From Octopus bimaculoides (taxonomy: Eukaryota), in contig NC_068982.1 in NCBI RefSeq assembly GCF_001194135.2, forward strand, positions 6,812,934 to 6,876,933: a DNA stretch of 64,000 bases, written 5' to 3'. Shown piece by piece: positions 5,821 through 64,000 of this stretch (position 1 is its first letter; each line of letters begins with the position of its first letter). Below the pieces are notes generated by a model. The model was not told the origin of the DNA. It saw only the letters and a program-made list of their open reading frames with translations, and did no database searches. A program made the position numbers and the translations under genes.

Positions 5821-6822
5821 GGTCGATCTTTCGGTACTAGATCCCATAACTTCCGGTCGTTGTGCGCACGCAGACTGATTACATTATCGTATAGGGGGTT
5901 CCTATAAGGTTGTTATCCACCCCTGACTGGAACTCTCCCGTATGACATGTACGCATGCTCAGTGACTTGCTTTAACTTCCGCAGACTAACATACTGTACT
6001 GACCGGTTAATATGTCTCCGAAGAAATCACGCAAATACTGCTGTATATGCAGCCACTATAGAAGGAAGAATGTAGACGGCAAAGTTATTTCACTACATAG
6101 ATATCCCGCAAACGTAGCTATTCGTCGTATTTGGTTTCAGAGATCGAGACTTGTGAGGAAAGACTTTGTTTACACTGCAAATAGCCAAATGTGTTCCCAG
6201 CATTTCGTCAATTTTAATGGACCATCGAAAGATCAACCCTTGCCATCCGTTTTTCTAAACAAAGTATTTAAAATATCAGTAAGTGCATGATCATANNNNN
6301 NNNNNTACGTTGGGCTAAACACGAATGTTTAATCTAATAATTGTTGTGTTGATGTACAGGTATTTTTAAAAAAGAATTTTGCATTCAAATAATAAATACA
6401 TTGAAATTGTTGTTAATGTTCTGAATGAATGTGAGAATTTCGAGTAAGCCTAGCTATGATATTTTTCTTTATATATATATATTTATTAATAAGGGTAGAA
6501 ATTGATATTAATCAATTAGAAGCAGTGGTCTAGCATATTAAAAAAATCCGAAGATTAAAATTATATTACATACAAAAATAAGAGGAATGACCAGCAAAAG
6601 TGGACTCCTATATGCTAGAAATAGATGCCGATTCGGCATCTATTTCTAGCAGTGGTTCCCAAACCTTTTAGAGACGCGACCCACTGTTTACGACACCAGT
6701 TCATGGCGACCCACTCCCCTCACATGCATACAGTTCTCAAACTTTAAACCTATAAACACACTATACGATAATGTATGCGCACAACGACCGGAAGTTATGG
6801 GATCTAGTACCGAAAGAATGCC
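5821..6822 (+). mobile_element. Internally deleted THAP-domain DNA transposon (PIF/Harbinger-ISL2EU-like, superfamily uncertain)
   Basis: Perfect 41-bp inverted repeat at 5828-5868 / 6776-6816, extendable inward by TACATTATCGTATAG after an 11-bp indel. GG...CC termini; THAP ORF inside. Confidence 0.75.
6012..6290 (+). CDS. THAP zinc-binding domain (transposase N-terminal exon)
   Basis: MSPKKSRKYCCICSH...SLHRYP...W...MCSQHF...LPSVF shows the C2CH ligands plus the conserved P, W, F, P of THAP. Strong donor CA|GTAAGT near 6279 suggests an intron follows. Confidence 0.8.
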   Translation: MSPKKSRKYCCICSHYRRKNVDGKVISLHRYPANVAIRRIWFQRSRLVRKDFVYTANSQMCSQHFVNFNGPSKDQPLPSVFLNKVFKISVSA

Positions 6823-7382: not shown

Positions 7383-8096
7383 TACAGTTCTATATTTAAG
7401 AGATGAAAAATTATGTACATTATTTATATTTGACGGATATTTGTCCTTATCTTGTTTGTTTATTATTATTATTATTATTATTATTGTTATTATATGCCCA
7501 CGAGCATATAGCGTTGTGGTTTAGAGCGCGTGCTACTAACCCCAAGATTCCGAGTTCTATTCTAGGCAGTGATATTAATAGTAATAATAATAATAGTAAT
7601 CTGTTGTGTCTGGGAGAGTCATTTTCCTATTATGCCTTAAAATTTAACACACACACCGTTAAAATTTCCACTTATTTCCTATTTTTATTTTCGTTGCGTC
7701 TTGCAACCTTTTCAATAGTCTTGACTCTCTTCAATAGTCTTGAGAGTCAAGACTAGTGAAAAGGTTGCAAGACGCAACGAAAATTTTAGGAAAATAAAAA
7801 TAAGAAATAAGTGGAAATTTTAACGGTGTGTTAAATTTTAAGGCACAATAAGAAAATGACTCTCCCCAGACACAACAGAATATGCTTCAACACACGAAAT
7901 CATATAAAAATTCTTGCAAAGCAAATCCAAAAACGAAAAATAATAATAATAACAACGAAAAATACCTTAGGAATGAGAACCCAGGTTCGAAATTTCCCCA
8001 AGACACCTAATGAAGGCTGGAGGGTATATCAGCCGAAACGTTGTGTTAACAACAAACAAGATGAGGACAAATATCTGTCAAATGTAAATAATGTAG
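7383..8096. mobile_element. tRNA-head/hammerhead fold-back element (family A), copy 1, with nested insertion
   Basis: Complete end TACAGTTCTATA at 7383; forward tRNA-like head ~7495-7572; hammerhead arm 8002-8047 (core mutated to CUAAUGA); TSD ATTAGTTTTA at 7375-7384 / 8097-8106. Confidence 0.85.
7600..7945 (+). mobile_element. Inverted-duplicated insert in the (AAT)n linker of A copy 1; possible R4/Dong-related 3' UTR
   Basis: Arms 7600-7729 / 7742-7879 are inverted repeats. Right arm continues to TGCAAAGCAAATCCAAAAACGAAAAT(AAT)n, resembling the Dong-type UTR end at 33792 and 63706. Confidence 0.55.
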
Positions 8097-8814
8097 ATTA
8101 GTTTTAGTTAAAAAAATATACTATGGGAGAGGAAAACAAGGTATAATGTAGATAAAATATGCTTATAAAAAGTATTAGGGTTTAAAATTAAAATAGCTGC
8201 ATATATTAGTTTAATGAATAAATAAATAAAATGAATAGATAAATACAATGATTAGATAGCTAGATATTTAGTATTAGATAAAAATATATACAATGAAGGG
8301 AGAGAAAGGTCAATATTAATATTAAGTCAAGAATAGGGGAAGGAAATATACAAGTAAGTCTTGATTACATTAATGATACATAAAGGGGGAATATAAATTA
8401 TCAATAGTGAATCAAAATAATGGTTACTAAGATTAGGGGAGAAAGTAAGGAGTATAAAATTGTAAAAAGATATGAAGAATATAATAAATAGAGGTAGAAG
8501 CAGGGGTTAAGGAATAACATATAGTTATAGTGGTAAAAAAAGAAATTAAGCATTTAGTTATCAATTTATCTATATTTGGAAAATACATATTTTCCTATGT
8601 GTAGACAAGAATTATTTCTCTCATCCCTAAGGTTAAGGAGAGGGAATTTTGCTGAGAGAATAAAAAATTTTTCATTTCAACAAAGAAAGCATTTTTTATT
8701 ATCACCTTTATAGGAGGGCGCTGAAGCTATTATATCCCATTTAATATCATAATTTATGGTACCACGTAAAAGGCAGGAGTGATGACTCCATATGAAAAGC
8801 AGTGGTGATTGTAT

Positions 8815-9252: not shown

Positions 9253-9344
9253 TAATTGTCATGTACTGATTTCTGGAAACTGGTTTCATGTTTTCTTTTG
9301 CTGGTTAAAAATTAATCATAGCATATTTTTGATTCTTTTTCATT

Positions 9345-9554
9345 TATTATTTTATATGTTACAGTCATTTGACTGCAGCCATGCTGGAGCACCGCCTTTT
9401 TGTTGAGCAAATCAACCCCAGGACTTATTCTTTGTAAGCCTGGTACTTATCTTATTAGTCTGTTTTGGCGAACTGCTAAGTGACAGGGACGTAAACACAC
9501 CAGCATCGGTTGTCAAGCGATGTTGGTGAGGAAAAACACAGACACACAAACATG

Positions 9555-9594
<40 letters not shown>

Positions 9595-9752
9595 CGATAG
9601 GCTCCTTTCAGTTTCCATCTACCAAATTCACTCACAAGGCTTTGGTCAGCCCGAGGCTATAGCAGAAGACACTTGCCCAAGGTGCCACACAGTGGGACTG
9701 AACCCGAAACCATGTGGTTGGTAAGCAAGCTACTTACCACACAACCACTCCT
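9345..9752 (-). mobile_element. tRNA-derived SINE family 1 (OR-like), full length
   Basis: A box TGGTTGTGTGG, B box GGTTCAGTCC, internal (TA/TG)n, 3' ...GACTG tail. Confidence 0.85.
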
Positions 9753-10885: not shown

Positions 10886-10996
10886 TTTACATTATTTACA
10901 TTTTACACCTTGTTTGTTGTTAACACATTTCAGCTGGTGTCTTGGGGAAATTTGAAATCTGGGTTCTCATTCCTAAGGTATTTTTCCATGTTGTTG

Positions 10997-11041
<45 letters not shown>

Positions 11042-11345
11042 CCACTGCCTGGAATCGAACTCGGAATCTTAAGGTTAGTAGCCTGTGCTCTTAACCACTA
11101 GGCCATATGCCCATGCCCATAGGCATATGGCGTAGTGGTTAATAATAATAATGATGATGATAATAATAATAACATTGAAAAATACCTTAGGGATGAGATT
11201 CCAGGTTCGAAATTTCCCCAAGACACCTGATGAAGGCTGGAGGGTATATCAGCCGAAACGTTGTGTTAACAACAAACAAGATGAGGACAAAATCTGTCAA
11301 ATGTAAATAATGTACACAATTCCTCATCTCTTGAATATAGAACTG
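10886..11345. mobile_element. Family A fold-back element, copy 2
   Basis: Reverse head 11038-11110, centre GCCATATGCCC..GGCATATGGC, intact forward hammerhead, complete end TATAGAACTG; 20-bp TSD GAACTGAAAAC(T/C)TTATGATT at 10866-10885 / 11340-11359. Confidence 0.9.
11222..11267 (+). ncRNA. Minimal type I hammerhead ribozyme (family A), core intact
   Basis: GACAC-CUGAUGA-A-GGCUG gagggtatat CAGCC-GAA-ACGU-U-GUGUU. Stem I GACAC/GUGUU, stem II GGCUG/CAGCC, palindromic ACGU stem III, predicted cleavage after U11262. Confidence 0.8.
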
Positions 11346-12066
11346 AAAACCTTATGATTATGAGCCAAACGCCCCTAACCTTCGAGCCACATGCCCTCAC
11401 TGAACCTGACTCCACAGAAAGTTTCATAACATGTGAAAATATGCTGATGAGGTGTACTTTTTGTCCTTGATTGTTGAGTATATTTTCTAAAGCTATTGTT
11501 TACAGAATGTACCCACCTCCAGCATAGGTAGTAACCATCTTTTACACCTTATTAGCAAACTAATGAAGGAGCCTCAAGGAATCGCTCAACTTGCAAGAAA
11601 TAGTCACCAAATCTCTTTTAAACATACTTCACCCTTGATAAAAGGAAAGACGTACTGGAGAATGTCTTCAGATGTTTAATAAAAGTATGATGACACGGTC
11701 ATGGTCTGAATGTTCAAATCATCATTTTGTGCAACCATGTGTGACATGGGGCTAATAGGAAAAAAAAAAAGGGGCAAATTTTTTTTAACATAATAATTGG
11801 AGAAATGCTTAGCACATTTGAGTTAAAATATATTAAGGTTGGAAAGTCACATATCCATACATTCTTACATTCATATCTTTCATTCATTTTTCATGTTAGC
11901 ATGGGTTGGCTGACTACTTACTATCAAGGCATTATTTTACAGCTACATGCCCTTCTTGTCACTTAGTATTAGCCATTTTTTTGAGAAAGTGTATTTTTAT
12001 TCCATTTGTCTTTGAAAGATTAAAGCGACCACCAATTTTGCTCAAACGTTTTCATGCAAAGACATT

Positions 12067-12281
12067 CTCTTTTACTCTTTTACTTGTTTCAGTCATTTGA
12101 CTGTGGCCATGCTGGAGCACCACCTTTAGTCAAGCAAATCGACCCCAGGACTTATTCTTTGTAAGCCTAGTACTTATTCTAGCGGTCTCTTTTGCCGAAC
12201 CGCTAAGTTACGGGCATGTAAACACACCAGCATCAGTTGTCAAGCGATGTTGGGGGGACAAACACAGACACACAAACATAT

Positions 12282-12326
<45 letters not shown>

Positions 12327-12467
12327 TACGATGGTCTTCTTTCAGTTTCAGTCTACCAAATGGCCCGAGGCTACTGTAGAAGACACTTGCCCAAGGTGCC
12401 ACGCAGTGGGACTGAACCCGGAACCATGTGGCTGGTAAGCAAGCTACTTACAACACAGCCACTCCTT
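12067..12467 (-). mobile_element. SINE family 1 (OR-like)
   Basis: Same head, body and tail as the 9345 copy; small internal deletion. Confidence 0.85.
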
Positions 12468-14285: not shown

Positions 14286-15511
14286 TCAGGTCATCCCATA
14301 AGTTCTGTCCGATTTTACCTTTTTCAAAATTGAATAAAATTTAATAGTATCTTAGAATGTCTAATGGAATTAAAAATTATTTTTATGCATTTGTGTACAT
14401 TTAAACTAATTAAACATTATTTTACAGAATAATAGAATTAAAATTCCTTTGATTAAAACCCTTTCTAAGATGGAAGTATCCAAAGAGCATTTAAGGTACA
14501 ATGCTTTATGAGTGCAAAAAAGGAAACTCTGCAGCCGAAGCGACTCGAAACATACACTCATTTTATGGGAAAGAATGCTCGAATGAAAGAACTTGCAGAA
14601 GATGGTTTGCAAAATTCAGAAGTGGAGATTTCAGCCTTGAAGATGAAGATCGAACAGGACGTCCNNNNNNNNNNNNNNNNNNNNNNNNNNNNNNNNNNNN
14701 NNNNNNNNNNNNNNNNNNNNNNNNNNNNNNNNNNNNNNNNNNNNNNNNNNNNNNNNNNNNNNNNNNNNNNNNNNNNNNNNNNNNNNNNNNNNNNNGTTCA
14801 TTGTCATCTTCAACAACTTGGAAAGGTTCCTAAACTTGGAAAATGGGTGCCTCGTGAATTGTCCGAAAGCAACCGCAAATTTCGAGTTGACATCTGCTCT
14901 TCTCTCCATTCTCGTGAACTCATTTCACCCTTTTAGGATAGACTTGTGACTGGTGACAGAAAATGGATCTTCTATTGAAATGTTAAATGTTGTAAACAGT
15001 GGCTTGGTAAAAGGGAAAAGCTCAACCACAACCGAGAAGGGAACTTCATGGGAAAAAGGTTCTTCCCTATATCTGGAGGGATTGCAAAGGAGTAATTCAC
15101 TTTGAATTGTTACCACCTAATGCAACAATCAATGCTCAAGTCTACTGTCAGCAATTAGAGCATTTGATCCAAGCTCTGAAGAAAAAAAGACCTGCTTTAG
15201 TGAATCGAAAAGGAGTGATGTTTCATCAGGACAATGTGCAACCCCACACTGCAAAGATCACATCACAGAAGATCGAAGAGCTTGTTTGGGAAAAAATTCT
15301 TCATCCACTTTATTCTCCTTCAGAATACCATTTTCTTCATAGTTTACAGAATCAGTTGGTGGACATAACTTTCGCAAGCCAGGAGGAGGTCGAAACTGAC
15401 ATTTCAGAGTTCTTCGCTTCGAAACCAAAAGAGTTTTACATTGATGGGATTAAAAAGCTTGTAAATAGATGGAAGGAAGTCATAGATAATCAGGGAAAGT
15501 ACATTGATGAT
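14286..15511 (+). mobile_element. Mariner transposon, dead; right TIR not seen
   Basis: TA|TCAGGTCATCCCATAAGTTCTGTCCG left TIR followed by a transposase relic. Confidence 0.9.
14470..15511 (+). pseudogene. Mariner DD34D transposase pseudogene (frameshifts, stop, gap)
   Basis: HTH GNSAAEATRNI..RTCRRWFAKFRSGDFSLED; WVPREL; VTGDRKW; HQDNVQPH; YSPSEYHF (PDLA deleted); C-terminus KKLVNRWKEVIDNQGKY. Confidence 0.92.
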
Positions 15512-16159
15512 TGTAGATATACTATTTTTTGAGGACTGGTAACTAAAACCACAAGATATGATGTTAGTCACCTTCAGTTGCAGTGAATACATTGCCTATC
15601 ACCGACTTTACTGCCAAATAAGCGTCATCTTCTGGCATTCATTGGTAAGCTTGCTGAAAATATGTAGCAGAGTGTGCTACTTAGGATGTTATATAAAAGT
15701 TTGGAAGTAAATTAGGGGCAGTTCCTATCTACCTTTATAATAAGTGGAATATTGCAGAATAACTACCAAGTTACAACTTACAACTATTTACTCTCAAATC
15801 CCTTATCATAGATGTATGAAACCAAATGCTGCAGATAAACTTTTTATTCTGGCAGACAATCCTTCTACTACACTTTGTGCTTAAAATATATTTAAAAAAT
15901 AAATCTTTCAGTGTTTTTCATTAACTAAGGCACTTGGGTACTCAATTTAGTAAATAGTGGCTGAGTATAGAAATATGTTCTATTAATGAAATTCTAAAAC
16001 TGAGGCAGCAAAACACAGTGTGTGAGAAGGCTAGGTCTTTGTCTTACAGATGCAATCCATCCAGAAGACATGCTTACAGTATCAAGCTACTCAATTCTAT
16101 TCACAAGATTCAGGGTGGCTTGAGGCTATAGGTAAAAGAAAATTTGTTCAATGGAAATG

Positions 16160-16581
16160 GGCTGTGCGTGAGAAGACCCGGCAAGCCAAGTAAGATCGTT
16201 GCCAGTGCCCCTGGACTGATTCTTGTGCGGGTGGCACATGAGATGCACCATTTTGAGCGTGGCCGTTGCCAGTACCGCCTGACTGGCTCCTGTAGGATTT
16301 TCGAGCGAGATCGTTGCCAGTGCCCCTGGACTGGCTTGTGCGGGTGGCACATAAAAGACACCATTTCGAGCGTGGCCGTTTTCGTGCGGGTGACACGTAA
16401 AAGCACCCACTACACTCTCTGAGTGGTTGGCGTTAGGAAGGGCATCCAGCTGTAGAAACTCTGCCAAATCAGACTGGAGCCTGGTGTTGCCATCCGGTTT
16501 CACCAGTCCTCAGTCAAATCGTCCAACCCATGCTAGCATGGAAAGCGGACGTTAAACGATGATGATGATGATGATGATGAT
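16160..16581 (+). mobile_element. RTE-type LINE 3' UTR/tail with internal subrepeats, young copy
   Basis: GGCGTTAGGAAGGGCATCCAGCTGTAGAAA...CCAACCCATGCTAGCATGGAAAGCGGACGTTAAAC(GAT)n. Confidence 0.8.
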
Positions 16582-19087
16582 ACCACACACTAGGATCAAA
16601 CCCAGGACTTCATGATTGCAAAGCAAACTTTTGGAGCAATCAGGCACACTGTTTCCACATTGTAAAGATGTCACTATTTATAAACCTGCACATTTAGATA
16701 ACAAGGAAAATATTCATAAGAAAAAAGACTAAAATAATCTGGCTCAACCTGTTTGATGGTTGAAGAATTACTGAAGAATTTTGAAGAGAATATACTGCAG
16801 GCTTCTGGAAAGATAAGAACTCTCTTTTAAAGGTGGGCACAATTGTTATTAGCTATACTAAAATTTCACTGCTTAGAGAAATGAATTTTCCAGTGGTCCA
16901 ATTTATAATTATGATTCCACTACGAAGGTCACAATTTACTCACATGCAGCATCTTTCAATGCTTGTCACTAATCTAATTCAGTTCTTAAACAAATTAAAA
17001 ACTGTTAACATTTTCGAAGAGGACTGGTCCCTAACAACATTTTGGCATAAAAAATACATTGAGATTTGATACAGCAGAAAAATGCTTATATCAAAATTTG
17101 TAGCGACGTTATAGGAGAGTAAGTAACACCACCAATCAAGTTTAGATCTAAATAACTTTTTTTATTTCAAAAACAAAATATATTTATTTTAGCTTCAATG
17201 ATAGAAGAAAGCATGAAGGATTTCACAGTTTTGGTTTCATGCAACAAGAAGTTGTCTTAAAACAGTTGTGAGGTAAAATATCATGAAAAAAATATAATAT
17301 GTATATGAATAAATGGCAACAGTCACGACAGGTGAAATTCCAGAAAAATATAGGATTGATTAACTCTTGACCATATTTATTTATGAGCCTTTTATTATGG
17401 TAACTTATTTTCTATCTATAATCAATGATGAATATTTGTAAAGTAATCTTGTATTTTTTTTTGTGGAGCCTATGTTGTCTGCTGGGCAGACCATACAATT
17501 AAATTAAAGAATTTTATTTAAACTGAAAGCTCAGTAAATATCGGAAAATTAGAAGTCATCATTTTTAAGAATTTAAACTCATAGAACTATACAAGGAAGC
17601 TACTAGAAATAGGAGATAACTTTCCATCAAATCACACTCAACTGTCTTAGGAAAAAAAAAAGGTACACATTGGATAATGGGGTCCTAAATACAGTGTATC
17701 TGAAAAATAAGAAAGATTGGATGGTCACCACTAGAATACCATTTAATCATAAGTTTGCTGACCTGGGGCTAAATAACCACGTAGCCATCAAGTCTTTTGG
17801 CTAGCAATATAATTTTCAATTTGATTTACTGCTATTATTTCAATGATTGCATGATAAGCTATTTCATTTATTACATGGTTTCGAGATCAACAACCAAATA
17901 ATACACTGCTAACCTTTTTACTTCATTAAGTAATTTAAAAAAAAAAAAAAAAATGATTTCTAGTATTGCTTTATTTAAGATCAATATTTAAGATTATTAT
18001 TTGAAATCAACATTCGAGGTCATTCAGTGATAAAAGCCATCAGGTATATGTCAGATTATTCTTCATCCATTTTTACACCATTAATTTTACCACTTTCCTA
18101 CGACCGGATCAATAATTTTGTTTTTATGCTCTTTTGCCTATTTGTTATTTATTGGAAGTGTTTTGGTCGGTTTGTTCTGTAGTTCCCCACTCTTGCCAGA
18201 TTTTATATAGTTATTAGAGCATGTAGTTTTCCTGATGTTCAAAAAACGAAAGAAAAAAACAACACTCATACTAAAGGAAATTTTATGAATTCATAAAAAC
18301 TACTGATCTGATACCATTCCGAAACCTAAACAATTGTTTCATCTTCCAATCTTTTTCTCCACCCACACCCCGATCTTTCCCATTTTCTCTCACTCTCTTT
18401 CTCTCCCTCCCTCTCCCCCCCCCCCCCATCTTTCTTTGCTTCAGCACTTTCTATTTCTTGTAAGATTGTAGTAATTGCTTCATTCTAATGGGGTCATGAT
18501 AAATAATATATGATTATTCTGGTGATAATCTGTCTTGAATTTATATATGTATTTGTTTCATAGTTCTCTCTCTCTAATTCCCACTTAAGTGAGTCAAAAG
18601 TAATAATAATAATAACAATAATAACAATAATAATAATAATAGTAACAAAAAAACATAGAAAGGAAAATATGCATTTTGAATATTAACATAATTTACATTG
18701 ACATATGGAAAGAGATGTTGCCTTGTTTTCTGGGGATTTTGAATTCGTTTATGTATTGATCTCACTTTGGAATAGAAACAGCAATCCAGCTTCGGAATAA
18801 AAAGCAAAATATTGTAATTTCTGTATGCAAGAATAATATTTGTTGCCTTGCTGAGACTAAAAAGGTTTTAATGACACAGAAACATATTTTGGGAATATAA
18901 CCAAAATTTAAATATATATTGGGTAGCTTAAATTTATGCAGGACATGTGTTCTGGCTAAGTCTGCGATATAAGTGGTATTCAAATGTTATACACCAGGCT
19001 TTTCATTCAGGTTGAGTTAACCGTGCCTGTAAACTGAATTTTGCCCAGTTTGTCAGTCTCCCAAACCCAAAACATAATACACGTTAA

Positions 19088-21426: not shown

Positions 21427-21826
21427 CTCTTTTTACTCTTTTACTCTTTTACTTGTTTCAGTCTTTTGACTGTGGCCATGTTGGAGCACCACCTTTAGTC
21501 GAGCAAATCAACCCCAGGACTTATTCATTAGAAGACTAGTATTTTTTCTATCAGTCTCTTTTGCTGAACCGCTACATTACGGGGACATAAACACACCAGC
21601 ATCGGTTGTCAAGCGATGTTGGGGGGACAAACACAGACACACAAACACACATATATACATATACATATACACGACGGGCTTCTTTCAGTTTCCGTCTACC
21701 AAATCCACTCACAAGGCTTTGGTCGGCCCGAGGCTATAGTAGACACTTGCCCAAGATGCCACGCAGTGGGACTGAACCCGGGACCATGTGGTTGGTAAGC
21801 AAGCTACTTACCACATAGCCACTCCT
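21427..21826 (-). mobile_element. SINE family 1 (OR-like); 5' end tandemly duplicated to ~21878
   Basis: Full head, body and tail; ~40-bp duplication of the head start. Confidence 0.85.
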
Positions 21827-22045
21827 ACGCCTACGTGGTAAGCAAGCTACTTACCACATAGCCACTCCTACGCCTACTCTCATCTCTATAGGAATTATTT
21901 TAATTGAGGATAAATTGTTGGTTTACTACAGAGGATTCTTGCACATATATTATTTACAGCTTCCTTGAAAAGCCATTAAGAGTTGAGTGATTCAACATTG
22001 GACACAGTGCACTAACAATAATAGACATTTTATCTCTTGATCCTT

Positions 22046-22195
22046 TATATTATTTACATTATTTACATTTGATGGATATTTGTCCTCATCTTGTTTGTTG
22101 TTAACACAACGTTTTGGCTGATATACCCTCCAGCCTTCATCAAGTGTTTTGGGGAAATTTCGAACCTAGGTTCTCATTCCTAAGGTATTTTTTGA

Positions 22196-22237
<42 letters not shown>

Positions 22238-22331
22238 CATTATTATTATTCATGTCACTGCGTGGAATCGAACTTGGAATCTTGGGGTTAGTAGCCCACG
22301 CTCTTAACCACTACGCCCTATGCCTGTGGGC

Positions 22332-22381
<50 letters not shown>

Positions 22382-22564
22382 TCGAAAAATACCTTAAGAA
22401 TGAGAACCGAGGTTCGAAATTTCCCCAAGACACCTGATGAAGGCTGGAGGGTATATCAGCCGAAGCGTTGTGTTAAAAAACAACAAGATGAGGACAAACA
22501 TCCGTCACATGTAAATAATGTACATAATGTACATAATTCCTTATCTCTTAAATACAAAACTGTA
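22046..22564. mobile_element. Family A fold-back element, copy 3
   Basis: Both hammerhead arms present but point-mutated; reverse head complete, forward head deleted after GGGCATA; TSD not clear. Confidence 0.9.
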
Positions 22565-22675: not shown

Positions 22676-23520
22676 AGTAGCTTGCTTACCCAAACACATG
22701 GTCCTGGGTTCAGTCCCACTGCGTGGCACCTTGGGCAAGTGTCTTCTACTATAGCTTCGGGCTGACCAAAGCCTTGTGAGTGGATATGGTAGACGGAAAC
22801 TGGAAGAAGCTCGTCATCATCATCATCATCATCATCGTTTAACGTCCGCTTTCCATGCTAGCATGGGTTGGACGATTTGACTGAGGACTGGTGAAACCGG
22901 ATGGCAACACCAGGCTCCAGTCTGATTTGGCAGAGTTTCTACAGCTGGATGCCCTTCCTAACGCCAACCACTCAGAGAGTGTAGTGGGTGCTTTTACGTG
23001 TCACCCGCACGAAAACGGCCACGCTCGAAATGGTGTCTTTTATGTGCCACCCGCACAAGCCAGTCCAGGGGCACTGGCAACGATCTCGCTCGAAAATCCT
23101 ACAGGAGCCAGTCAGGCGGTACTGGCAACGGCCACGCTCAAAATGGTGCATCTCATGTGCCAACCGCACAAGAACCAGTCCAGGGGCACTGGCAACGATA
23201 TGTATATATATGTATATGTTTATGTATATATATGTATATGTATATGTATATGTATATATGTATATGTATATGTATATATATGTATATGTTTGTGTGTGTA
23301 TATGTTTGTGTGTTTGTGCTTGTCCCCCCCCCCAACATCGCTTGACAACCAATGCTGGTGTGTTTACGTCCCCATAACTTAGCGGTTCAGTAAAAGAGAC
23401 CGATAGAATAAGTACCAGGCTTACAAAGAATAAGCTCTGGGGTCGATTTGCTCAACTTAAAGGCGGTGCTCCAACATGGCCACAGTCAAATGACAGAAAC
23501 ATGTAAAAGAGTAAAAAGAG
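22676..23520 (+). mobile_element. SINE family 1 interrupted at its internal microsatellite by an RTE tail
   Basis: 5' part 22676-22813; 3' part ~23290-23520. Confidence 0.85.
22814..23199 (-). mobile_element. RTE-type 3' tail, near-identical inverted copy of 16195-16581
   Basis: Only two mismatches found by eye over ~385 bp. Confidence 0.85.
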
Positions 23521-25714: not shown

Positions 25715-26030
25715 TCTTTTATTTGATATTAATTGGTTGAAGGAGAGGTTTTCTTTTAGCTGCTCGTCCGCAATACCCAAGCTTATGCAGATATATAAGA
25801 CACATTCTTGGACTGGCTTCTAGCTGTTTTGCAATGTCAGAAGCCTTCAAACGGGGTTCGTTTTCCACAATTCTCTTCAAACAACGAAGCTTACTTTCCA
25901 GGGGCCCAGGTTGGCCGGGACAAGGATCTGTTGATTCTTTTCCTTGGCTTTTGAATTGCACTATAATTCTATTAACAGTAGCAAGAGGAATTTGTGATGT
26001 TGAACTATTCTAGATGTTATAGGGTTTACT
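25715..26030 (-). pseudogene. Tc1-family transposase N-terminal fragment
   Basis: IPLATVNRIIVQFKSQG...PGQP...LKRIVENEPRLKASDIAKQL...YLHKLGYCGRAAKRKPLL matches the Tc1/Tc3 paired-like HTH region. Confidence 0.8.
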
Positions 26031-26092
26031 GAAATAAGACCCCAAAATTGTGATAATATATAAGACCTAATAAGCATACATTCATCATCATT

Positions 26093-26286
26093 TCTATATT
26101 TAAGAGATGAAGAATTATGTACATTATTTACATTATTTACATTTGACAGATATTTTCATCATCTTGTTTGTTATTAACACAATGTTTCAGCTGATATACC
26201 CTCACCCTCCATCACAGGCATATGGCGTAGTGGTTAAGAGTGCAGGCTACTAACCCCAAGATTCTAAGTTCGATTCAAGGCAGTGA

Positions 26287-26341
<55 letters not shown>

Positions 26342-26519
26342 CAGAAGAAGAAGAAGAAGAAGAAGAAGAACAACAACAACAACATCGAAAAATACCTTAG
26401 GAATGAGAACTCAGGTTCGAAATTTCCCCAAGACACCTGATGAAGGCTGGAGGGTATATCAGCTGAAACGTGTTAACAACAAACAAGATGAGGACAAATA
26501 TCCATCAAATGTAAATGAT
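26093..26519. mobile_element. Family A fold-back element, copy 4
   Basis: Left arm deleted mid-hammerhead; forward head A box TGGCGTAGTGG (26223-26233), B box GTTCGATTC (26268-26276); TSD ATTCATCA(T/C)CATT at 26080-26092 / 26520-26532. Confidence 0.9.
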
Positions 26520-29926: not shown

Positions 29927-30535
29927 GTATGTGTGTGTGTATTTATGTGTGCGTCTTTGTGTCTGTGTTTGCTATCCACCCCATTGCTTGACAACTGATG
30001 TTGATGTGTTTACGTCCCCATAACTTAGCAGTTCAGCAGAAATGACTGATAGAATAAGCAACAGGCTTACAGAGAATAAGTCCAGGGGTCGATTTCTTCA
30101 ACTAAAAGGCAGTGCTCCAGCATGGTCCCAGTTAAATGACTGAAACAAATAAAAGAATAAAAAAAGATAAATGAGGAGGAAGAGTGGCTGTGTGGTAAGT
30201 AGCTTGCTTACCAATCACATGGTTCCGAGTTCAGTCCCACTGTGTGGCGCCTTGGGCAAGTGTCTTCTACTATAACCTCGGGCTGACCAAAGCCTTGTGA
30301 GTGGATTTGGTAGACGGAAACTGAAAGAAGCCCGTCATATTGTCCCCCCAACATCACTTGACAACCGATACAGGTGTGTTTACGTCCCCGTAACTTAGAG
30401 GTTCGGCAAAAGAGACCGATAGAATAAGTACTAGGCTTACATAGACTAAGTCCTGGGGTCGATTTGTTCAACTAAGGCGGTGCTCCAGCATGGCCACAAG
30501 TCAAATGACTGAAACAAGTAAAAAAAAAAAAGAGA
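29640..30535. mobile_element. Cluster of SINE family 1: reverse 3' half, forward 3' half, forward full copy (30175-30535)
   Basis: Family motifs in both orientations; last copy lacks the internal microsatellite. Confidence 0.8.
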
Positions 30536-31080: not shown

Positions 31081-31834
31081 TACAGTTCTATATCTAAGAG
31101 ATGAGGAATTATGTACATTATTTACATTATTTACATTTGACGGATATTTGTCCTCATCTTTGTTGTTAACACAATGTTTCGGCTGATATACCCTCCAGCC
31201 TTCATCAGGTGTCTTGGGGAAATTTCAAATCTGGCTTCTCGTTCCTAAGGTATTTTTCGATGTCATTATTATTATTATTGAGTGAGAGAGAAATGCATGC
31301 CATCAAAGTGACACTGGAGTAAAATATATGAAGCCCATTATACCCATCAGGACTACCCGTCTGATAAGGGTACACCAGGCACATGTATCACAACCATATG
31401 TGCCTGACATGGTGATCTCATATCAAGATAAACTGTGAATGACCTTGCAGGTGGGGCCCAGTTAGAATTTTCTTCAGGTCAAGTAGCCCATACCACTCAA
31501 AGGTCCCTGAATAAGGTTTGTTTAAGGATGTTGAGCAAAACACCCGTGTTTCCAATGGTGAATTATCCAAACCCCAAAGAATTCCTCTCAACACATGGCT
31601 ATGATGCTTACCCACTGCTTCTGCTCAAGATCAGAGATGCACATATCGTCAGCTACCAGGGGACATGCTCAACTGGTTAAGGTCAAACAATTGATATTCA
31701 AATCTGTGGTATTAAGCAGAATATTTACTGTAGCCCATCTTTTTATACCAAGACAAAACAATGTACATGATAATACTTCCAATCAATTAAGATCAGAAGC
31801 TATGAGAGCCACTGCTTGGTACTGCACACATGCA

Positions 31835-31898
<64 letters not shown>

Positions 31899-32164
31899 TC
31901 AGTGCCTGGCATATGGCATAGTGGTTAAGAGCGTGGGCTACTAACCCCAAGATTCCAAGTTCGATTCCACGCAGTGACATGAATAATAATAATAATACAA
32001 ATAATAATAATAATAACAACAACATCGAAAAATACCTTAGGAATGAGAACCCAGGTTTGAAATTTTCCCCTGGACACCTGAAGAAGGCTGGAGAGTACAT
32101 CAGATGAAATGTGCTAAAAACAAACAGGATGAGGACAAATATCCGTCAAATGTAAATGTAAATA
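31081..32164. mobile_element. Family A fold-back element, copy 5, with nested insertion
   Basis: Complete left end; TSD ATTTACCAAGAT at 31067-31078 / 32165-32176. Confidence 0.88.
31272..31835 (-). mobile_element. Unclassified ~560-bp non-coding element inserted in the (ATT)n linker
   Basis: Higher-complexity insert bounded by (ATT)n on both sides; no ORF recognised. Confidence 0.55.
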
Positions 32165-32539
32165 ATTTACCAAGATCCTTTAAATAATAGCAGTAGACAA
32201 AATTCTTGATGAAAGGAAACCAAAGCTGTTTGATTGAAGTGTGTTGAAAAATAAGAATTGTAATAGAATCAATATGAAGAAGAAAGAGAAGAAAGAAAAT
32301 TATAAAATATAGAAATGACAAAAATAAAACTTTGTTGTACTAAATCTGAAGAATGATTCAAGGTAAGACATTGAGCTGAATTATACTTCAGATCTTGTTA
32401 AGATAATTGTTAGATAATTGTGCAGACATATATGTATGTATGTATGTATGGATGGATGTATGTATGTATGTATGCATGCATCTATGTATGTATGTATATA
32501 TGGATGTATGTATGTATGCATGCATCTATGTATGTATGT

Positions 32540-33591: not shown

Positions 33592-33970
33592 TACAGTTCT
33601 ATATTCAAGAGATGAGGAATAATGTACGTAATTTATATTATTTATATTTGATGGATATTTGTCCTCACCTTGTTTGTTGTTAACACAATGTTCTGGCTGG
33701 TGTACTCTGCAGCCTTCATCAGGTGTCTTGGGAAAATTTCAAACCTGGGTTCTCATTCCTAAGGTATTTTTAGATGTCATTATTATTATTATTTTATGTT
33801 TGACTTTTGCTTTGCATTTGTACAAGTTGGATCCAAGTCTCACCCAGAGACCTCAAGAGACAACAAGTGAGAAGTTCATGTAGGTGTTATGCCTAGGGTA
33901 CCATATATTTGGATTTGTACATAATGTTGTTCTAGAGAATATTTAAGAAACCATGAGAAAATTATGTTTG

Positions 33971-34041
<71 letters not shown>

Positions 34042-34237
34042 TCACTGCCTGGAATCAAACTCGGCATCTTGGGGTTAGTAGTCTGTGCTCTTAAGCCCAT
34101 GGGCATATGGCATAGTGGTTAAGAGCGAGGGCTGCTAACCCCAAAATTCCGAGTTCAATTCCAGGCAGTGACCTGAATAATAATGATAATGATAATTATC
34201 CGTCAAAATTTCCGTCAAATGTAAATAATGTAAATAA
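33592..34237. mobile_element. Family A fold-back element, copy 6, with Dong-type insert
   Basis: Both heads partly retained around GCCCATGGGC; right hammerhead deleted; imperfect TSD TTGT(TC/CT)CTGGAT at 33578-33589 / 34238-34249. Confidence 0.85.
33792..33972 (-). mobile_element. 5'-truncated R4/Dong-type 3' UTR inserted in (AAT)n
   Basis: Closely matches 63706-63880, which lies downstream of an R4-type ORF end. Confidence 0.75.
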
Positions 34238-34325
34238 TTGTCTCTGGATTTTTAATTGTACATTCACATCCACATTTTTAATAGTACGTTCCACATCGCA
34301 GCAGATGTATGTCTGTATGTCTGTA

Positions 34326-40974: not shown

Positions 40975-41700
40975 CAGAGATGAATTAGTGCAAACCTTCT
41001 TTCAAGACCCACAGAAAAAAAACAAAAAAACTGGTGAATATGATAATTTATGCAACAATCCTGTTTTAAAAGACCATTGTTGAAACATCAGTAGCCATAT
41101 TAATGACATTAAATAAAGCTGAAATCTGCCATGAAGTATCACTATACAAAAATAAAATATTATCTTGCAAAATTCCAAAAATTCAAACATAACAAAAAAA
41201 TTTTAAGCATAGATAAGAAGAAATATCACTCTTTTAAAAGTATTAAACACAAATCTTCAAGAATTGATGGAAGCCTTTGAATAAATAATGGCTAAATTTG
41301 ACAGAATTTTCAGTAAAAATGAAGGGAGTTAGGAATTTTTTGACAGATATAGGTATTTTAATCAGCTTTGTTGACAGGAGAGATCTGAAACAAAAAACAA
41401 TATGAAAACAAAGCAGCAGAAACAAATAATAAATTGGACAATAGATAATTATTAGAGGAAACTGGATCAGTAAAAGGTTTATGGATTAGCAAAACAGTTG
41501 AAAAAAAGGGAAAAGAGATGTTATGGAGTAAGTATCAAGGAAACTATACCAAATGGTTAAAGATCTAAACAAGGAATGGGTTTCTAAATGTTGAAGAAAT
41601 ATATGACACCCTACCAAACAAAGCAAATGAAATAATTGATAAAAAGAAACAATAAAGCGATGAATTCAAGTCAACACAAATTAAAGGTGGCAAGTATTGT
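40975..41700 (+). pseudogene. Third, most decayed RTE-like relic downstream of paralog 3
   Basis: DELVQTFFQD aligns to DKELEIFFQN at 30820; strong A-rich strand bias. Confidence 0.35.
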
Positions 41701-41713
41701 GCTAAAAAAAAAG

Positions 41714-41879
41714 CTACACTCTTGGAGTGGTTGGTGTTCGGAAGGGCATCCAGCTGTAGAAACATTGCCAGATCAGTTTGGAGCCTGGTGAGGCATCCTG
41801 GCTTGCCAGTCCCCAGTCAATCCGTCCAACCCATGCCAGCATGGAAAACAGACGTTAAATGATGATGATGATGATGATG
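41714..41879 (+). mobile_element. RTE-type 3' tail
   Basis: Family motif ending in (GAT)n. Confidence 0.8.
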
Positions 41880-45456: not shown

Positions 45457-45822
45457 ATCATCATCATCATCGTTTAATTTCCACTTTCCATGCTGGCATG
45501 GGTTGGATTGTTTGACTGGAGGCTGGCAGGCCAGAAGGCTGTACCAGGCTCCAATCCAATCTGGCAAAGTTTCTACAGCTGGATGCCCTTCCTAATGCCA
45601 ACCACTCCGAGAGTGTAAGTGGATGCTTTTTACATGCCACCAGCATGAGTGCCAGTCTGGCAGCACTGGCAACAACCATGCTCGAATGGTACTTTTTACG
45701 TGCCACCGGAATGGAATCAGTCAGCCGGCACTGGCATCGACTACTCTCGAATGGTGCTTTTTACATGCCATCAGCACGGGAGCCACTCAGGTGGCACTAG
45801 TAATGGTGCTTTTAACGTGCTA
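45457..45822 (-). mobile_element. RTE-type 3' tail with subrepeats
   Basis: Family motif plus GGTGCTTTTTAC(A/G)TGCC subrepeats. Confidence 0.8.
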
Positions 45823-47561: not shown

Positions 47562-47703
47562 GTGTGGCTGCATGGTAAGAATCTTGCTTCCCAATCACAT
47601 GATTTCAGGTTCAGTCCCACTGTGTGGCATCTTGGGCAAGTGTCTTGGGTTGACCAAAGTCTTGTGAGTGGATTTGGTAGATGGAAACTGAAAGAAGCTC
47701 GTC

Positions 47704-47749
<46 letters not shown>

Positions 47750-48450: not shown

Positions 48451-49446
48451 ACGACGGTGACGTTGGGAGAAATTGTAGCTTCCGCTGCAACCGAGATACC
48501 GATAAAATGATTCTCATTAAAAGACTGTTTCAAGAGAAAGGCAGGACGGAACATCAGAGGCAGTTCATTGAGTTTGTGGATGGGGCAAAGATTTCTGGTT
48601 TTGTAAGACTGGAGAATCAAAGACACTGGACACATTTATCGATGACAGGCATTGCTATCAAATGAAGGTGAATATGGCATAATCATATTCTCTAAATAAC
48701 TTGCTTAAAGTTTGATCTTAGCTTTGTTATCCAAAAACAAAACAAAAATTCAAATAGAAATAGTAAATTTATATATTTATGTCAAAAATATTTAATTGTT
48801 TACAGTGTTATTTAAAAACAAATGTATTTTTAATGAAATTTATATATTTAAGAAACATATTCAGCTCCACAGCATGATAAATCGAATATCATCTCGTATA
48901 AAATTCAATTATATAAATTTAAGCTCATATGCTTATGTTTGTGTTTGCTTGTGTCACTTGTAATGAATTATTCAAGAAATAATACTAACTCTTAAAAGCT
49001 GGCTATAATCCCACCAAATGATTGATGAGCGAAAAATATAACTTCCCACAGTATCATTCTGTTAAAGTTTTCTTCTAGTGAGCAATATTAATCCAAACAA
49101 TTTATATAGCTGCAGTAAAATGAAGAGAATGTTTTTGAAAATAATACATTATAGAACATTTTACTGAGTGACCACAATAATAATTTCACTCAGCTAAGTT
49201 GGCAAAATGCCAGATAATGGATCAAAGTATTAATTTCCATTTGAAATGTAAAGCACTATGTCTGTGACAAGTTTACTTAATTTTCGATGGAGCAGTTTTA
49301 TTTTGCTAAAAATGAGAGCTGTAAGGAGATGTGTTCCACTGTATACTTGGATGATGTCTTAATGCCTTCAGGTACTGATAACTCATCTTTCAGTCGATAA
49401 AACCTAGAATTAACTGGTATATTTTATCTTAATATAGTAGAAATGA

Positions 49447-49613
49447 TTTACGTTATTTACATTTGACGGATATTTGTCCTCATCTTGTTTGTTGTTAACA
49501 CAACATTTCGGCTGATATACCCTCCAGCCTTCATCAGGTGTCTTAGGAAAATTTCGAACCCGAGTTCTCATTCCTAAGGTATTTTTCGATGTTGTTGTTG
49601 TTGCTGTTGTTGC

Positions 49614-49687
<74 letters not shown>

Positions 49688-49765
49688 TCACTGCTTGGAA
49701 TCGAACTCGGAATCTTGGGGTTAGTAGCCCGCGCTCTTAACCACTACTTCATAATAATAATAGTA

Positions 49766-49817
<52 letters not shown>

Positions 49818-50016
49818 CAACAACAACTGCAACATCGAAAATACCTAAGGAATGAGAACCCAGGTTTCGAAATTTCCGCAAGACACTTGATGAAGGCTGG
49901 AGAGTATATCAGCCGAAACGTTGTGTTAACAACAAACAAGATGAGGACAAATATCCGTCAAATGTAACTAATGTAAGTAATCTACATAGTTCCTCATCTT
50001 TTGAATATAGAACTAT
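49447..50016. mobile_element. Family A fold-back element, copy 7
   Basis: Both hammerhead arms near-intact; reverse head complete, forward head deleted; perfect TSD TATAGTAGAAATGA at 49433-49446 / 50014-50027. Confidence 0.92.
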
Positions 50017-50350
50017 AGTAGAAATGAGTTAAAAGTCTAAGCAATGAATGAAACACTGAACATTTATCAGTCCCTGAAAAGTTTTATAAAACTGTCTCTA
50101 GTGTGCTGAAGGAAATATGGTCCACATAATTTCTGCAGCATTTAAGAATTATTTTCTAATTTAGAAAACAGTTTCTTCCTTAAATTTAATCTGTTTTCTC
50201 TAGAAAAAAAGGTATACTCTGCTTTGCGAATAAGGTTTAAGGTTTGTTTATTTTTTATTTTTAAGAAGATGCCTTTGTGAAGAAACTTTCAATGAGTTAC
50301 AGGACCGTTTGTTAAGCTAAACCAGCAGATTGCAATTTAATTGATATTTA

Positions 50351-63496: not shown

Positions 63497-63705
63497 TACA
63501 ATTCTATATCTAAGAGATGAGGAATTATGTACATTATTTACATTTGATGGATATTTGTCCTCATCTTGTTTGTTGTTAACACAACGTTTCGGCTGATATA
63601 CCCTCCAGCCTTCATCAGGTGTATTGGGAGAAATTTCGAACCTGGGTTCTCATTCCTAAATATTTTTGATGTTGTTGTTGTTATTATTATTATTATTATT
63701 ATTAT
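63497..63705 (-). mobile_element. Family A element, copy 8 (left arm only visible)
   Basis: Complete end, hammerhead and (ATT)n, then interrupted by the R4/Dong element. Confidence 0.85.
63578..63623 (-). ncRNA. Minimal hammerhead ribozyme (family A), core intact
   Basis: Minus strand UACAC-CUGAUGA-A-GGCUG..CAGCC-GAA-ACGU-U-GUGUU. Confidence 0.75.
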
Positions 63706-64000
63706 TTTATGTTTGACTTTTGTTTTGCATTTGTACAAGTTGGATTCAAGTCTCACCCAGAGACCTCAAGAGACAACAAGTTAGAAGTTCATGTAGTGTT
63801 ATGCCTAGGATACCATATATTTGGATTTGTACAGTTTTGTTCAAGTGAATATTTAAGAAACCATAAGAAAATTATGTGTTTGCTTTAAAATTTGAGATCA
63901 CATAGACAGTATTTTACGTAGGATATGGGCAGTTCCCATGAGCACTATCTTTTGAACTTCAGCCATTTTGGTGTTTCCTGGAATCTGATCTAGGTAGTAA
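63706..64000 (-). mobile_element. 3' end of an R4/Dong-clade (RLE) non-LTR retrotransposon, continuing beyond the window
   Basis: Minus-strand 63999-63898 encodes YYLDQIPGNTKMAEVQKIVLMGTAHILRKILSM*, matching the R4-clade C-terminal QK..L.GTA.ILR..L motif; ~190-nt 3' UTR then (TAA)n. Confidence 0.8.

What the first reader, a model, noticed from the sequence alone, without database searches (positions are those of the whole stretch)
10886..11345. Candidate new system: tRNA-headed, hammerhead-carrying fold-back retroelement (Penelope-dependent SINE / retrozyme-like), eight copies in 64 kb
Seen: copies at 7383, 10886, 22046, 26093, 31081, 33592, 49447 and 63497. The composite arm reads GGGCATATGGCGTAGTGGTT (A box)...GGG-CTACTAA-CCC (anticodon-like loop, ACT)...GAGTTCGATTCC (B box) - (AAT)n - ~55 nt - minimal hammerhead - ~75 nt - TATAGAACTGTA. 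The two arms are joined head-to-head at the 5' start of the tRNA-like head. The sense arm has no TTTT run in the better-preserved copies, so Pol III could read through to the fixed end. There is no ORF. Established: SINEs use tRNA-derived internal promoters and normally borrow LINE 3' ends; Penelope-like elements carry minimal hammerheads in pLTRs. Inference: a Pol III promoter fused to a Penelope pLTR created a non-autonomous, self-cleaving retroposon mobilised by a PLE RT/GIY-YIG enzyme. I do not know of a description of this combination but cannot check databases.
Basis: partly seen in the sequence, partly recalled or inferred. Interest (0 to 1): 0.93.

Follow-up and report, generated by a model that had tools for sequence, protein, structure and literature searches.

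The report
Octopus tRNA-headed hammerhead SINE, Penelope-type insertions
This is a real, abundant short retroposon of an octopus genome with a tRNA-derived head and a Penelope-type minimal hammerhead; its fold-back shape is the footprint of Penelope-like integration rather than a new kind of system.

Summary
All eight copies are at the stated coordinates, within 4 nt. Each is built from a tRNA-like head (T), an (AAT)n tract and a 184-nt body (H) that carries a hammerhead.

The window is Octopus DNA, most likely O. bimaculoides.

The hammerhead has the traits published for Penelope-like element (PLE) minimal hammerheads:
- a G10.1-C11.1 pair;
- a palindromic ACGU in place of helix III;
- a 5-bp helix I.

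Each complete copy is a single insertion. Five of seven have significant target-site duplications of 10-20 bp. Two arms lie head-to-head. One arm ends at the exact 3' terminus; the other stops 26-45 nt short.

A genuine RT/GIY-YIG PLE fetched here (L003) has the same anatomy: inverted arms, a hammerhead about 45 nt from the shared arm end, a 31-nt tail on one arm only, and a 12-bp TSD.

So the fold-back is most likely made at integration and is not part of the RNA.

Not shown: Pol III transcription, self-cleavage, and a partner PLE sharing the 3' module.

The combination is not unprecedented. The schistosome Sm-alpha/Sj-alpha SINE-like elements pair a Pol III promoter with a hammerhead, and animal retrozymes are already viewed as non-autonomous PLEs. 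I rate this a new variant of a known kind, of moderate interest.

The parts
10886..11345 (.). Copy c2, the given finding: a whole fold-back unit. Arm A lies on the - strand and arm B on the + strand.
10886..11112 (-). c2 arm A (no tail). It holds the full T head (11038-11112), (AAT)n, and H1-61 plus H89-144. The hammerhead core is deleted.
11122..11345 (+). c2 arm B (tailed). It holds T2-22 only, (AAT)n, and H1-182 ending in ..TATAGAACTG.
11222..11267 (+). Intact minimal hammerhead: GACAC-CTGATGA-A-GGCTG(G)..CAGCC-GAAA-CG-T-T|GTGTT.
   Evidence: traits as in PMC4209133
10866..10885 (.). c2 left target-site duplication, GAACTGAAAACTTTATGATT. Its partner is at 11340-11359 with 1 mismatch.
   Evidence: control
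7383..8098 (.). Copy c1. Arm B is H98-184 at 7383-7460 (-). Arm A is T at about 7502-7572 (+) and H3-145 at 7956-8098 (+). A palindromic insert sits at 7597-7882 in the simple repeat. The TSD is ATTAGTTTTA.
22046..22564 (.). Copy c3. Arm A (-) is H1-151 at 22046-22196 and T at 22251-22324. Arm B (+) is T1-8, the simple repeat, and H1-184 at 22381-22564. No significant TSD.
26089..26519 (.). Copy c4. Arm B (-) is H55-182 at 26089-26214. Arm A (+) is T at 26217-26290 and H1-139 at 26384-26519. The TSD is ATTCATCAyCATT.
31081..32170 (.). Copy c5. Arm B (-) is H1-184 at 31081-31261. A 553-bp insert lies at 31283-31835 in the simple repeat. Arm A (+) is T at 31908-31981 and H1-152 at 32024-32170. 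The TSD is ATTTACCAAGAT.
33592..34239 (.). Copy c6. Arm B (-) is H1-184 at 33592-33775, a 183-bp module at 33792-33975, and T19-75 at 34038-34094. Arm A (+) is T at 34101-34175 and H107-158 at 34185-34239. A decayed TSD, TTGTyyCTGGAT, is not significant.
49443..50017 (.). Copy c7. Arm A (-) is H1-148 at 49443-49590 and T6-75 at 49684-49753. Arm B (+) is H1-184 at 49834-50017. The TSD is GTAGAAATGAkTTA.
63497..63887 (-). Copy c8, arm B only. It holds H5-184 at 63497-63667, the simple repeat, and the same 183-bp module as c6 at 63705-63887. The remainder up to the window end at 64000 is not family sequence, so the second arm is not in the window.

Best explanation
This is a family of short, non-coding retroposons of Octopus.

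**The unit (shown).** It consists of:
- a tRNA-derived head of about 75 nt that keeps A and B boxes;
- an (AAT)n(CAA)n tract;
- a 184-nt body. The body holds a PLE-type minimal hammerhead at H49-94, a short GTAAATAAT tandem repeat, and a fixed 3' end (..TATAGAACTGTA).

**The insertions (shown).** Each genomic copy is a single insertion flanked by a TSD of 10-20 bp. It holds two copies of the unit head-to-head with their 3' ends outward. Arm B reaches the exact 3' terminus. Arm A stops 26-45 nt earlier, inside or just after the 9-mer repeat, often at a microhomology with the target.

**Mechanism (inferred).** An RNA spanning head to tail is reverse-transcribed at a staggered nick by the RT/GIY-YIG enzyme of a Penelope-like element. 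At the 5' end of the RNA the enzyme turns round and copies back. This creates the inverted arm and leaves a 'tail' on one side only, as it does for autonomous PLEs.
- The head probably supplies an internal Pol III promoter. This is inferred from the boxes, their spacing, and the absence of TTTT in the sense strand.
- The hammerhead is a module inherited from a PLE 3' region. It would cleave only as a dimer, if at all. Its role here, whether RT recognition or processing, is unknown.
For: **Family and modules.**

**Single-event insertion.** TSD scores are 10, 17, 10, 12 and 15 in c1, c2, c4, c5 and c7. Random pairs of windows score 5.7 +/- 1.3, and only 1.3% reach 10.

**Hammerhead.**
- It has the published min-HHR traits: an extra nucleotide between 9 and 10.1, G10.1-C11.1, palindromic 15.2-16.2, and a helix I of 4-5 bp (PMC4209133).
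- It is detected only in this family.

**Published PLE signature.** An inverted 5'-truncated copy, a 30-40-bp tail at one end, and complex structures (PMC8557442). Dual min-HHRs 100-700 bp apart on opposite strands are reported in S. mansoni.

**Direct comparator L003.**
- It has two RT/GIY-YIG ORFs head-to-head.
- The arms are 2056 nt and 100% complementary, with a 29-nt spacer.
- A min-HHR, GCC-CTGAAGA-A-GACCG..CGGTC-GAAA-CG-T-C-GGC, lies on both arms.
- There is a 31-nt tail on one arm only and a 12-bp TSD.

L004, a Harmonia PLE, is also head-to-head.

**One source sequence per insertion.** The arm-A and arm-B majority bases differ at only 2 of 149 columns. The deletions near the centre differ from copy to copy.

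**Host.** Octopus. Penelope families are recently active in O. vulgaris (PMC13282606).

**Head.**
- The sense consensus has no TTTT.
Against: - No autonomous PLE sharing the H 3' module was found or could be searched for. The window has no PLE coding remnant (best tblastn E-value 0.03 with 120 PLE proteins).
- ARAGORN and the Rfam tRNA model reject the head, and Rfam hammerhead models do not hit.
- In none of the seven copies do an intact head and the full 3' tail sit on the same arm. A competent master copy has therefore not been seen.
- The head is always damaged on arm B and never on arm A. A simple copy-back model followed by random deletion does not explain this.
- Only 3-4 of about 12 hammerhead-bearing arms keep an intact core.
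Confidence: 0.7

Rival explanations
1. The whole fold-back is the transposing unit. One RNA, made by read-through or from a promoter at one outer end, spans both arms and is copied as a hairpin-forming template. The tRNA-like head is then a passenger and not the promoter.
For: - One outer end is exact and the other is variable with microhomology, like the 3' and 5' junctions of a single cDNA.
- The asymmetry is constant: full head on arm A, damaged head on arm B, in 7/7 copies.
Against: - There are no arm-specific fixed substitutions (2 of 149 columns).
- The deletions next to the centre differ in every copy, so they are not inherited from a master.
- Autonomous PLEs form the same inverted structure with arms that are 100% identical (L003). 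That points to formation at integration.
Confidence: 0.12
2. It is an ordinary LINE-dependent tRNA SINE, for example one of the octopus OR/OK families. The hammerhead-like motif would be fortuitous, and the inverted arms would come from twin priming.
For: - Octopus genomes are dominated by tRNA SINEs, and RTE, CR1 and Dong-R4 LINEs are abundant (PMC8967140; PMC13282606).
- Arm A ends in a short tandem repeat, as many SINE tails do.
Against: - Twin priming inverts non-overlapping parts of one RNA. Here H1-145 is present twice in each copy.
- 7 of 7 copies are inverted.
- The hammerhead carries four traits that were not part of the search pattern and are typical of PLEs.
- A tail on one end only is a PLE trait, seen directly in L003.
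Confidence: 0.08
3. It is a non-LTR retrozyme. Transcripts self-cleave at two hammerheads and circularise, and the circular RNA is the template.
For: It carries a type I hammerhead and is non-coding. Animal retrozymes are linked to PLEs (PMC7229834; bioRxiv 10.64898/2026.07.22.740005).
Against: - There are no direct tandem repeats at any of the eight loci.
- Each strand has a single sense hammerhead.
- The hammerhead is the minimal type, without helix III or loop-loop contacts. Published in-vitro activity for this type is low.
Confidence: 0.05
4. It is a foldback or MITE-type DNA transposon with long inverted arms.
For: Long inverted arms and flanking duplications.
Against: - TSD length varies from 10 to 20 bp.
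- The two termini are not inverted copies of each other, because one arm is 26-45 nt longer.
- Microhomology occurs at one end only.
- The modules are a Pol III head and a PLE-type hammerhead.
Confidence: 0.03

Closest known systems
Autonomous EN+ Penelope-like elements (Penelope/Poseidon/Neptune type), with L003 and L004 as examples fetched here
   Same: - A minimal type I hammerhead near the 3' end with the same layout: CUGANGA, an extra A, a G-C-closed helix II, then GAAACGU.
- Head-to-head inverted copies with a short spacer.
- A 30-40-nt tail on one end only.
- TSDs of about 12 bp, variable in length.
   Different: The octopus element has no RT/GIY-YIG ORF and is only about 300 nt per arm. 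In place of a pLTR promoter its 5' end is a tRNA-derived head followed by (AAT)n.
Schistosome Sm-alpha / Sj-alpha SINE-like elements
   Same: Short, non-coding, and a Pol III-type promoter followed by a hammerhead (PMC6765202).
   Different: Those carry a canonical, efficient hammerhead and are often in direct tandem. Here the hammerhead is the minimal, dimer-dependent type and the copies are inverted, not tandem. The original papers were not held, so their details come from a review.
Animal non-LTR retrozymes
   Same: Non-autonomous hammerhead carriers thought to use PLE enzymes.
   Different: Retrozymes are direct tandem repeats of 170-400 nt that give circular RNAs, and no tRNA head is described for them. 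This family is dispersed and inverted, and has a tRNA-like head.
Classical tRNA-derived SINEs (SINE2), including the octopus OK/OR1/OR2 families of Ohshima & Okada 1994
   Same: A tRNA-derived head with A and B boxes, a body, a short-repeat tail, TSDs and high copy number. The head resembles tRNA-Arg, and OR may stand for an Arg-derived octopus SINE (from memory only).
   Different: Classical SINEs borrow a LINE 3' end and insert as single direct copies. I could not obtain the OR/OK consensus sequences to test identity.

Membership tests
tRNA-derived SINE (SINE2) | A 5' head derived from a tRNA, with Pol III A and B boxes at tRNA-like spacing | tested here: met
   - A box TGGCGTAGTGG at T8-18 and B box AGTTCGATTCC at T52-62.
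- Caveat: ARAGORN and the Rfam tRNA model do not call it. The cloverleaf stems have decayed.
tRNA-derived SINE (SINE2) | Short, non-coding, dispersed, and flanked by TSDs | tested here: met
   Each arm is about 300 nt. Eight dispersed copies lie in the window. Five of seven TSDs are significant. Only spurious ORFs are present.
tRNA-derived SINE (SINE2) | Transcribed by RNA polymerase III | not testable with these tools
   Indirect only: intact boxes in the consensus and no TTTT in the sense consensus.
tRNA-derived SINE (SINE2) | A 3' module shared with an autonomous partner | not testable with these tools
   No octopus genome collection is searchable here. The viral and metagenome scans were empty. 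No PLE or LINE coding sequence with this 3' end lies in the window.
PLE-dependent (non-autonomous Penelope-like) element | A minimal type I hammerhead with PLE traits | tested here: met
   - An extra A between positions 9 and 10.1.
- G10.1-C11.1.
- The ACGU palindrome.
- A 5-bp helix I and a 5-6-bp helix II.
- Compared with PMC4209133 and with the L003 hammerhead.
PLE-dependent (non-autonomous Penelope-like) element | Inverted and/or tandem copies generated at insertion | tested here: met
   All 7 complete copies are head-to-head inside one TSD pair. The L003 and L004 PLEs show the same arrangement.
PLE-dependent (non-autonomous Penelope-like) element | A 30-40-bp tail at one end only | tested here: met
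   Arm B extends 26-45 nt beyond arm A in all 7 copies. L003 has a 31-nt tail. Literature.
PLE-dependent (non-autonomous Penelope-like) element | Sequence identity of the 3' region with an autonomous PLE of the same genome | not testable with these tools
   120 PLE proteins were retrieved, but none was identifiable as octopus. Penelope families do exist in Octopus.
Non-LTR retrozyme | Direct tandem units, each with a hammerhead, yielding unit-length circular RNA | tested here: not met
   No direct tandem arrangement exists at any locus. Circular RNA is not testable here.
Foldback/MITE DNA transposon | Symmetrical terminal inverted repeats and a fixed-length TSD | tested here: not met
   The termini differ by 26-45 nt, and the TSDs are 10, 12, 13, 14-18 and 20 bp.
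Rfam Hammerhead_1 / tRNA families | Reaches the family covariance-model score | tested here: not met
   There were no hits at the gathering score or at E <= 10. For the hammerhead this may be because it has no helix III hairpin.

The most novel reading that the evidence does not exclude
This would be a true tRNA-promoter SINE whose autonomous partner is a Penelope-like element rather than a LINE, with the minimal hammerhead region serving as the shared 3' recognition module. It would be one of the many 'unclassified' SINE families behind the octopus SINE expansion.

Because the unit is short, every insertion shows the entire PLE integration product: the apex, the tail and the TSD. The family would then act as a natural reporter for the still-unknown PLE copy-back mechanism. 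That includes the unexplained rule that only the tailed arm loses its head.
Probability: 0.3. Interest if true: 0.65.

Novelty: new variant of a known kind. Interest (0 to 1): 0.5.

Why it matters
- SINEs are by definition partnered with LINEs. A tRNA-headed SINE that uses Penelope-like enzymes would widen that rule. It could also help classify some of the hundreds of unclassified octopus SINE families (PMC13282606).
- The way PLEs produce inverted copies and a one-sided tail is described as undefined (PMC8557442). A 300-nt element that reproduces those features in every copy gives many small, fully readable integration products from which to infer the mechanism.
- It would also explain part of the thousands of 'orphan' minimal hammerheads dispersed in animal genomes.

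Tried and rejected
**Automatic callers.**
- ARAGORN on the window and on the head consensus found nothing.
- Rfam found no tRNA or hammerhead, either at gathering score or at E <= 10 on two sub-regions. Only weak miRNA-like hits appeared on the palindromic centre.

**Collection and literature scans.**
- Exact-pattern scans of viral contigs and metagenome contigs gave 0 hits.
- A full-text search for five sequence strings of the element gave 0 papers.
- A literature search for OR1/OR2 found nothing.
- Ferbeyre 1998 and Lunse 2017 are not held. Craig 2021 has no supplements held as text.

**Looking for more octopus DNA and a partner PLE.**
- An exact-protein look-up of a window ORF was not on record.
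- Searching the H reading frame as a protein gave only three hits.
- A synthetic PLE-like query retrieved 6418 PLE proteins, but none could be assigned to Octopus. The partner PLE therefore remains unfound.
- tblastn of 120 PLE proteins against the window was negative.
- One 20.6-kb O. bimaculoides locus (L001) has no copy of the family.

**Analyses that did not help.**
- Arms of one copy are no closer to each other than to arms of other copies. The pattern is star-like and most shared changes are CpG decay, so this does not separate the models.
- The dimer-fold energy evaluation was not informative.

**Hypotheses rejected.** Foldback DNA transposon, retrozyme and L1-type twin priming; the reasons are given under the rival explanations.

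Full report
**1. What is there**

The window is eukaryotic. It is 33% G+C, has 11 runs of N and many microsatellites.

blastn of the flagged segment, and of two module consensus sequences I derived, finds the family only at eight places:
- 7383-8098
- 10886-11345
- 22046-22564
- 26089-26519
- 31081-32170
- 33592-34239
- 49443-50017
- 63497 onward (only one arm lies in the window)

The modules are:
- **T**, a 75-nt head: GGGCATATGGCGTAGTGGTTAAGAGCGCGGGCTACTAACCCCAAGATTCCGAGTTCGATTCCAGGCAGTGACCTG.
- An **(AAT)n(CAA)n** tract.
- **H**, a 184-nt body that ends in ..TTCCTCATCTCTTAAATATAGAACTGTA.

The arms differ from the consensus by 3-10%, in a star-like pattern. Most shared changes are at CpG sites. 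The copies are therefore old, independent insertions.

**2. Host**

- A translation of H matches an Octopus bimaculoides UniRef entry at 84% identity. It also matches the first exon of a predicted O. bimaculoides dystrobrevin-beta isoform.
- Other repeat families of the window are 80-93% identical to an O. bimaculoides chromosome segment (L001).

The window is Octopus, probably O. bimaculoides.

**3. The head**

- The A box (TGGCGTAGTGG) and the B box (AGTTCGATTCC) fit the Pol III consensus and lie at tRNA spacing.
- The combined pattern occurs twice exactly, against 0.00 expected.
The score is 67, against 14.8 +/- 5.9 for shuffles.
- The stems have decayed. ARAGORN and the Rfam tRNA model do not call it.
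- Every complete copy has the head (7/7).
- The sense consensus has no TTTT. In four copies the first TTTT lies 10-105 nt beyond the arm.

**4. The hammerhead**

H49-94 reads GACAC-CUGAUGA-A-GGCUG(G)..CAGCC-GAAA-CG-U-U|GUGUU.

It has no helix III hairpin, so it could only act as a dimer through the ACGU palindrome. That may also be why Rfam does not hit it.

It shows the traits that Cervera & de la Pena list as emerging features of PLE minimal hammerheads (PMC4209133):
- a G10.1-C11.1 pair;
- a palindromic 15.2-16.2;
- a helix I of 4-5 bp.

The sequence motif occurs 3 times against 0.01 expected. A structural scan I wrote hits four arms of this family and nothing else on either strand. Most genomic copies carry inactivating changes, as expected for old copies.

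**5. Anatomy of an insertion**

Each complete copy contains two arms head-to-head with their 3' ends outward.

The arms are not equivalent:
- **Arm B** reaches the exact 3' terminus.
- **Arm A** stops at H139-158, inside or just after a GTAAATAAT repeat. It often stops at a short match to the target.
- Arm B therefore carries a 26-45-nt 'tail' that arm A lacks.

The whole unit is flanked by a direct repeat. The scores are 10, 17, 10, 12 and 15 in c1, c2, c4, c5 and c7, for lengths of 10-20 bp. Random window pairs score 5.7 +/- 1.3, and 1.3% reach 10. In c6 the repeat is decayed, and c3 has none.

Variable TSD length and unequal termini exclude a foldback DNA transposon.

**6. Comparison with real PLEs**

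The literature describes PLE insertions as often carrying an inverted 5'-truncated copy and a 30-40-bp tail at one end (PMC8557442). It also reports pairs of minimal hammerheads 100-700 bp apart on opposite strands in S. mansoni.

I tested this directly. A PLE-like query retrieved thousands of RT/GIY-YIG proteins, and I fetched three loci.

L003 (ENA ERZ25068511) has:
- two PLE ORFs head-to-head;
- arms of 2056 nt, 100% complementary, with a 29-nt spacer;
- a minimal hammerhead on each arm, GCC-CUGAAGA-A-GACCG..CGGUC-GAAA-CG-U-C-GGC, 45 nt from the shared arm end;
- a 31-nt extension on one arm only, and a 12-bp TSD, TTAGAAACATTG.

L004 (Harmonia axyridis) is also head-to-head.

The octopus element reproduces this anatomy at small scale. 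The distance from the hammerhead end to the arm-A end is 45-64 nt, the tail is 26-45 nt, and the TSDs are 10-20 bp. This is the main evidence that a PLE enzyme made these insertions.

**7. Fold-back made at integration, or inherited?**

- The majority bases of arm A and arm B differ at only 2 of 149 columns.
- The deletions next to the centre differ in every copy.

Both arms therefore come from one source sequence at each insertion. The fold-back is not copied from a master. L003, with identical arms, says the same.

In five copies the centre is T1 against T1 with 0-8 nt between them. This fits a turn-round at the 5' end of the RNA.

**8. Unexplained**

In 7/7 copies arm A keeps the head; c7 lacks only T1-5. 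Arm B has lost part or all of the head:

| Copy | What remains of arm B near the centre |
|---|---|
| c1 | T1-8 |
| c2 | T2-22 |
| c3 | T1-8 |
| c4 | nothing before H55 |
| c5 | the head from about T64, or T1-5 joined to T66-75 (the GGCA repeat makes the junction ambiguous) |
| c6 | T1-4 + T19-75 |
| c7 | no head |

Random deletions that break a palindrome should hit either arm (two-sided p about 0.016).

A consequence follows. No copy in the window has an intact promoter head and the full tail on the same arm, so all look dead on arrival.

One idea is directional second-strand synthesis across a copy-back hairpin. It is untested.

**9. What is not shown**

- Pol III transcription.
- Cleavage.
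- A partner PLE.

The window has no PLE coding remnant. No searchable collection held octopus DNA. Penelope families are present and recently active in Octopus (PMC13282606; PMC8967140).

**10. Known relatives and novelty**

- Schistosome Sm-alpha/Sj-alpha are SINE-like elements with a Pol III promoter and a hammerhead (PMC6765202).
- Animal retrozymes are proposed to be non-autonomous PLEs.
- Non-autonomous PLEs are known in Chlamydomonas.

The combination is therefore not new in kind.

I did not find the following described:
- a tRNA(Arg)-like head joined to a minimal, PLE-type hammerhead module;
- its insertion as PLE-style inverted units;
- its presence in a cephalopod.

The family may overlap the octopus OR SINEs of 1994, but I could not check. 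My verdict is a new variant of a known kind, of moderate interest.

Noticed in passing
window 14498-15532 (+): A mariner/Mos1-type transposase pseudogene, split by the N gap at 14665-14795. Pfam finds HTH_48 (E 1e-17) and Transposase_1 (E 5e-19). It is 61% identical to an O. bimaculoides SETMAR-like protein.
   Followed up: partly
window 6003-6287 (+); 25722-26009 (-): An ORF with a THAP domain (E 8e-7). A Tc1/Tc3-type HTH fragment (E 9e-6, below the Pfam cut-off). Both are further transposon debris.
   Followed up: partly
window 9341-9752, 12072-12466, 21441-21827, 30182-30495, 47551-47725, 53529-53839 and others: A repeat family of about 380 bp with (TG)n/(TA)n tracts. It is 81-93% identical to two places in the O. 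bimaculoides locus L001 and is more frequent in the window than the family under study.
   Followed up: no
window 16113-16509 (-), 22885-23379 (+), 41568-41816 (-), 45516-45797 (+), 46366-46689 (-): A second dispersed repeat family, also present in L001 at 16400-16591. It has no Pfam match.
   Followed up: no
window 7597-7882: A palindromic, MITE-like element with arms 83% identical, inserted in the (AAT)n tract of copy c1.
   Followed up: partly
window 33792-33975 and 63705-63887: The same 183-bp module (92% identical) lies at the same position, between the simple repeat and H of arm B, in two copies with different flanks. This suggests a longer sub-family or a shared secondary insertion in a master copy. 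A unique 553-bp insert at 31283-31835 sits at the equivalent place in c5.
   Followed up: partly
protein P0012 (O. bimaculoides dystrobrevin beta isoform X1): The predicted protein starts MPMGIWHSG-EGWRVYQPKCCVNNKQDEDKYPS. This is the start of the T head fused to the hammerhead region of H, so a copy of this element supplies an alternative first exon in the gene model.
   Followed up: partly
L002 1-183 (Logan SRR11869385_239750): A diverged copy (85% identical) made of (AAT)n plus H5-152. It ends without a tail, as arm A does. The organism of the run is not identified.
   Followed up: no
H31-41 in every arm, e.g. window 11204-11214: The body has a second B-box-like motif, GGTTCGAAATT, within ..CCCAGGTTCGAAATTTCCCC.. 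It may be the relic of a second tRNA-like unit. Seen by eye only.
   Followed up: no
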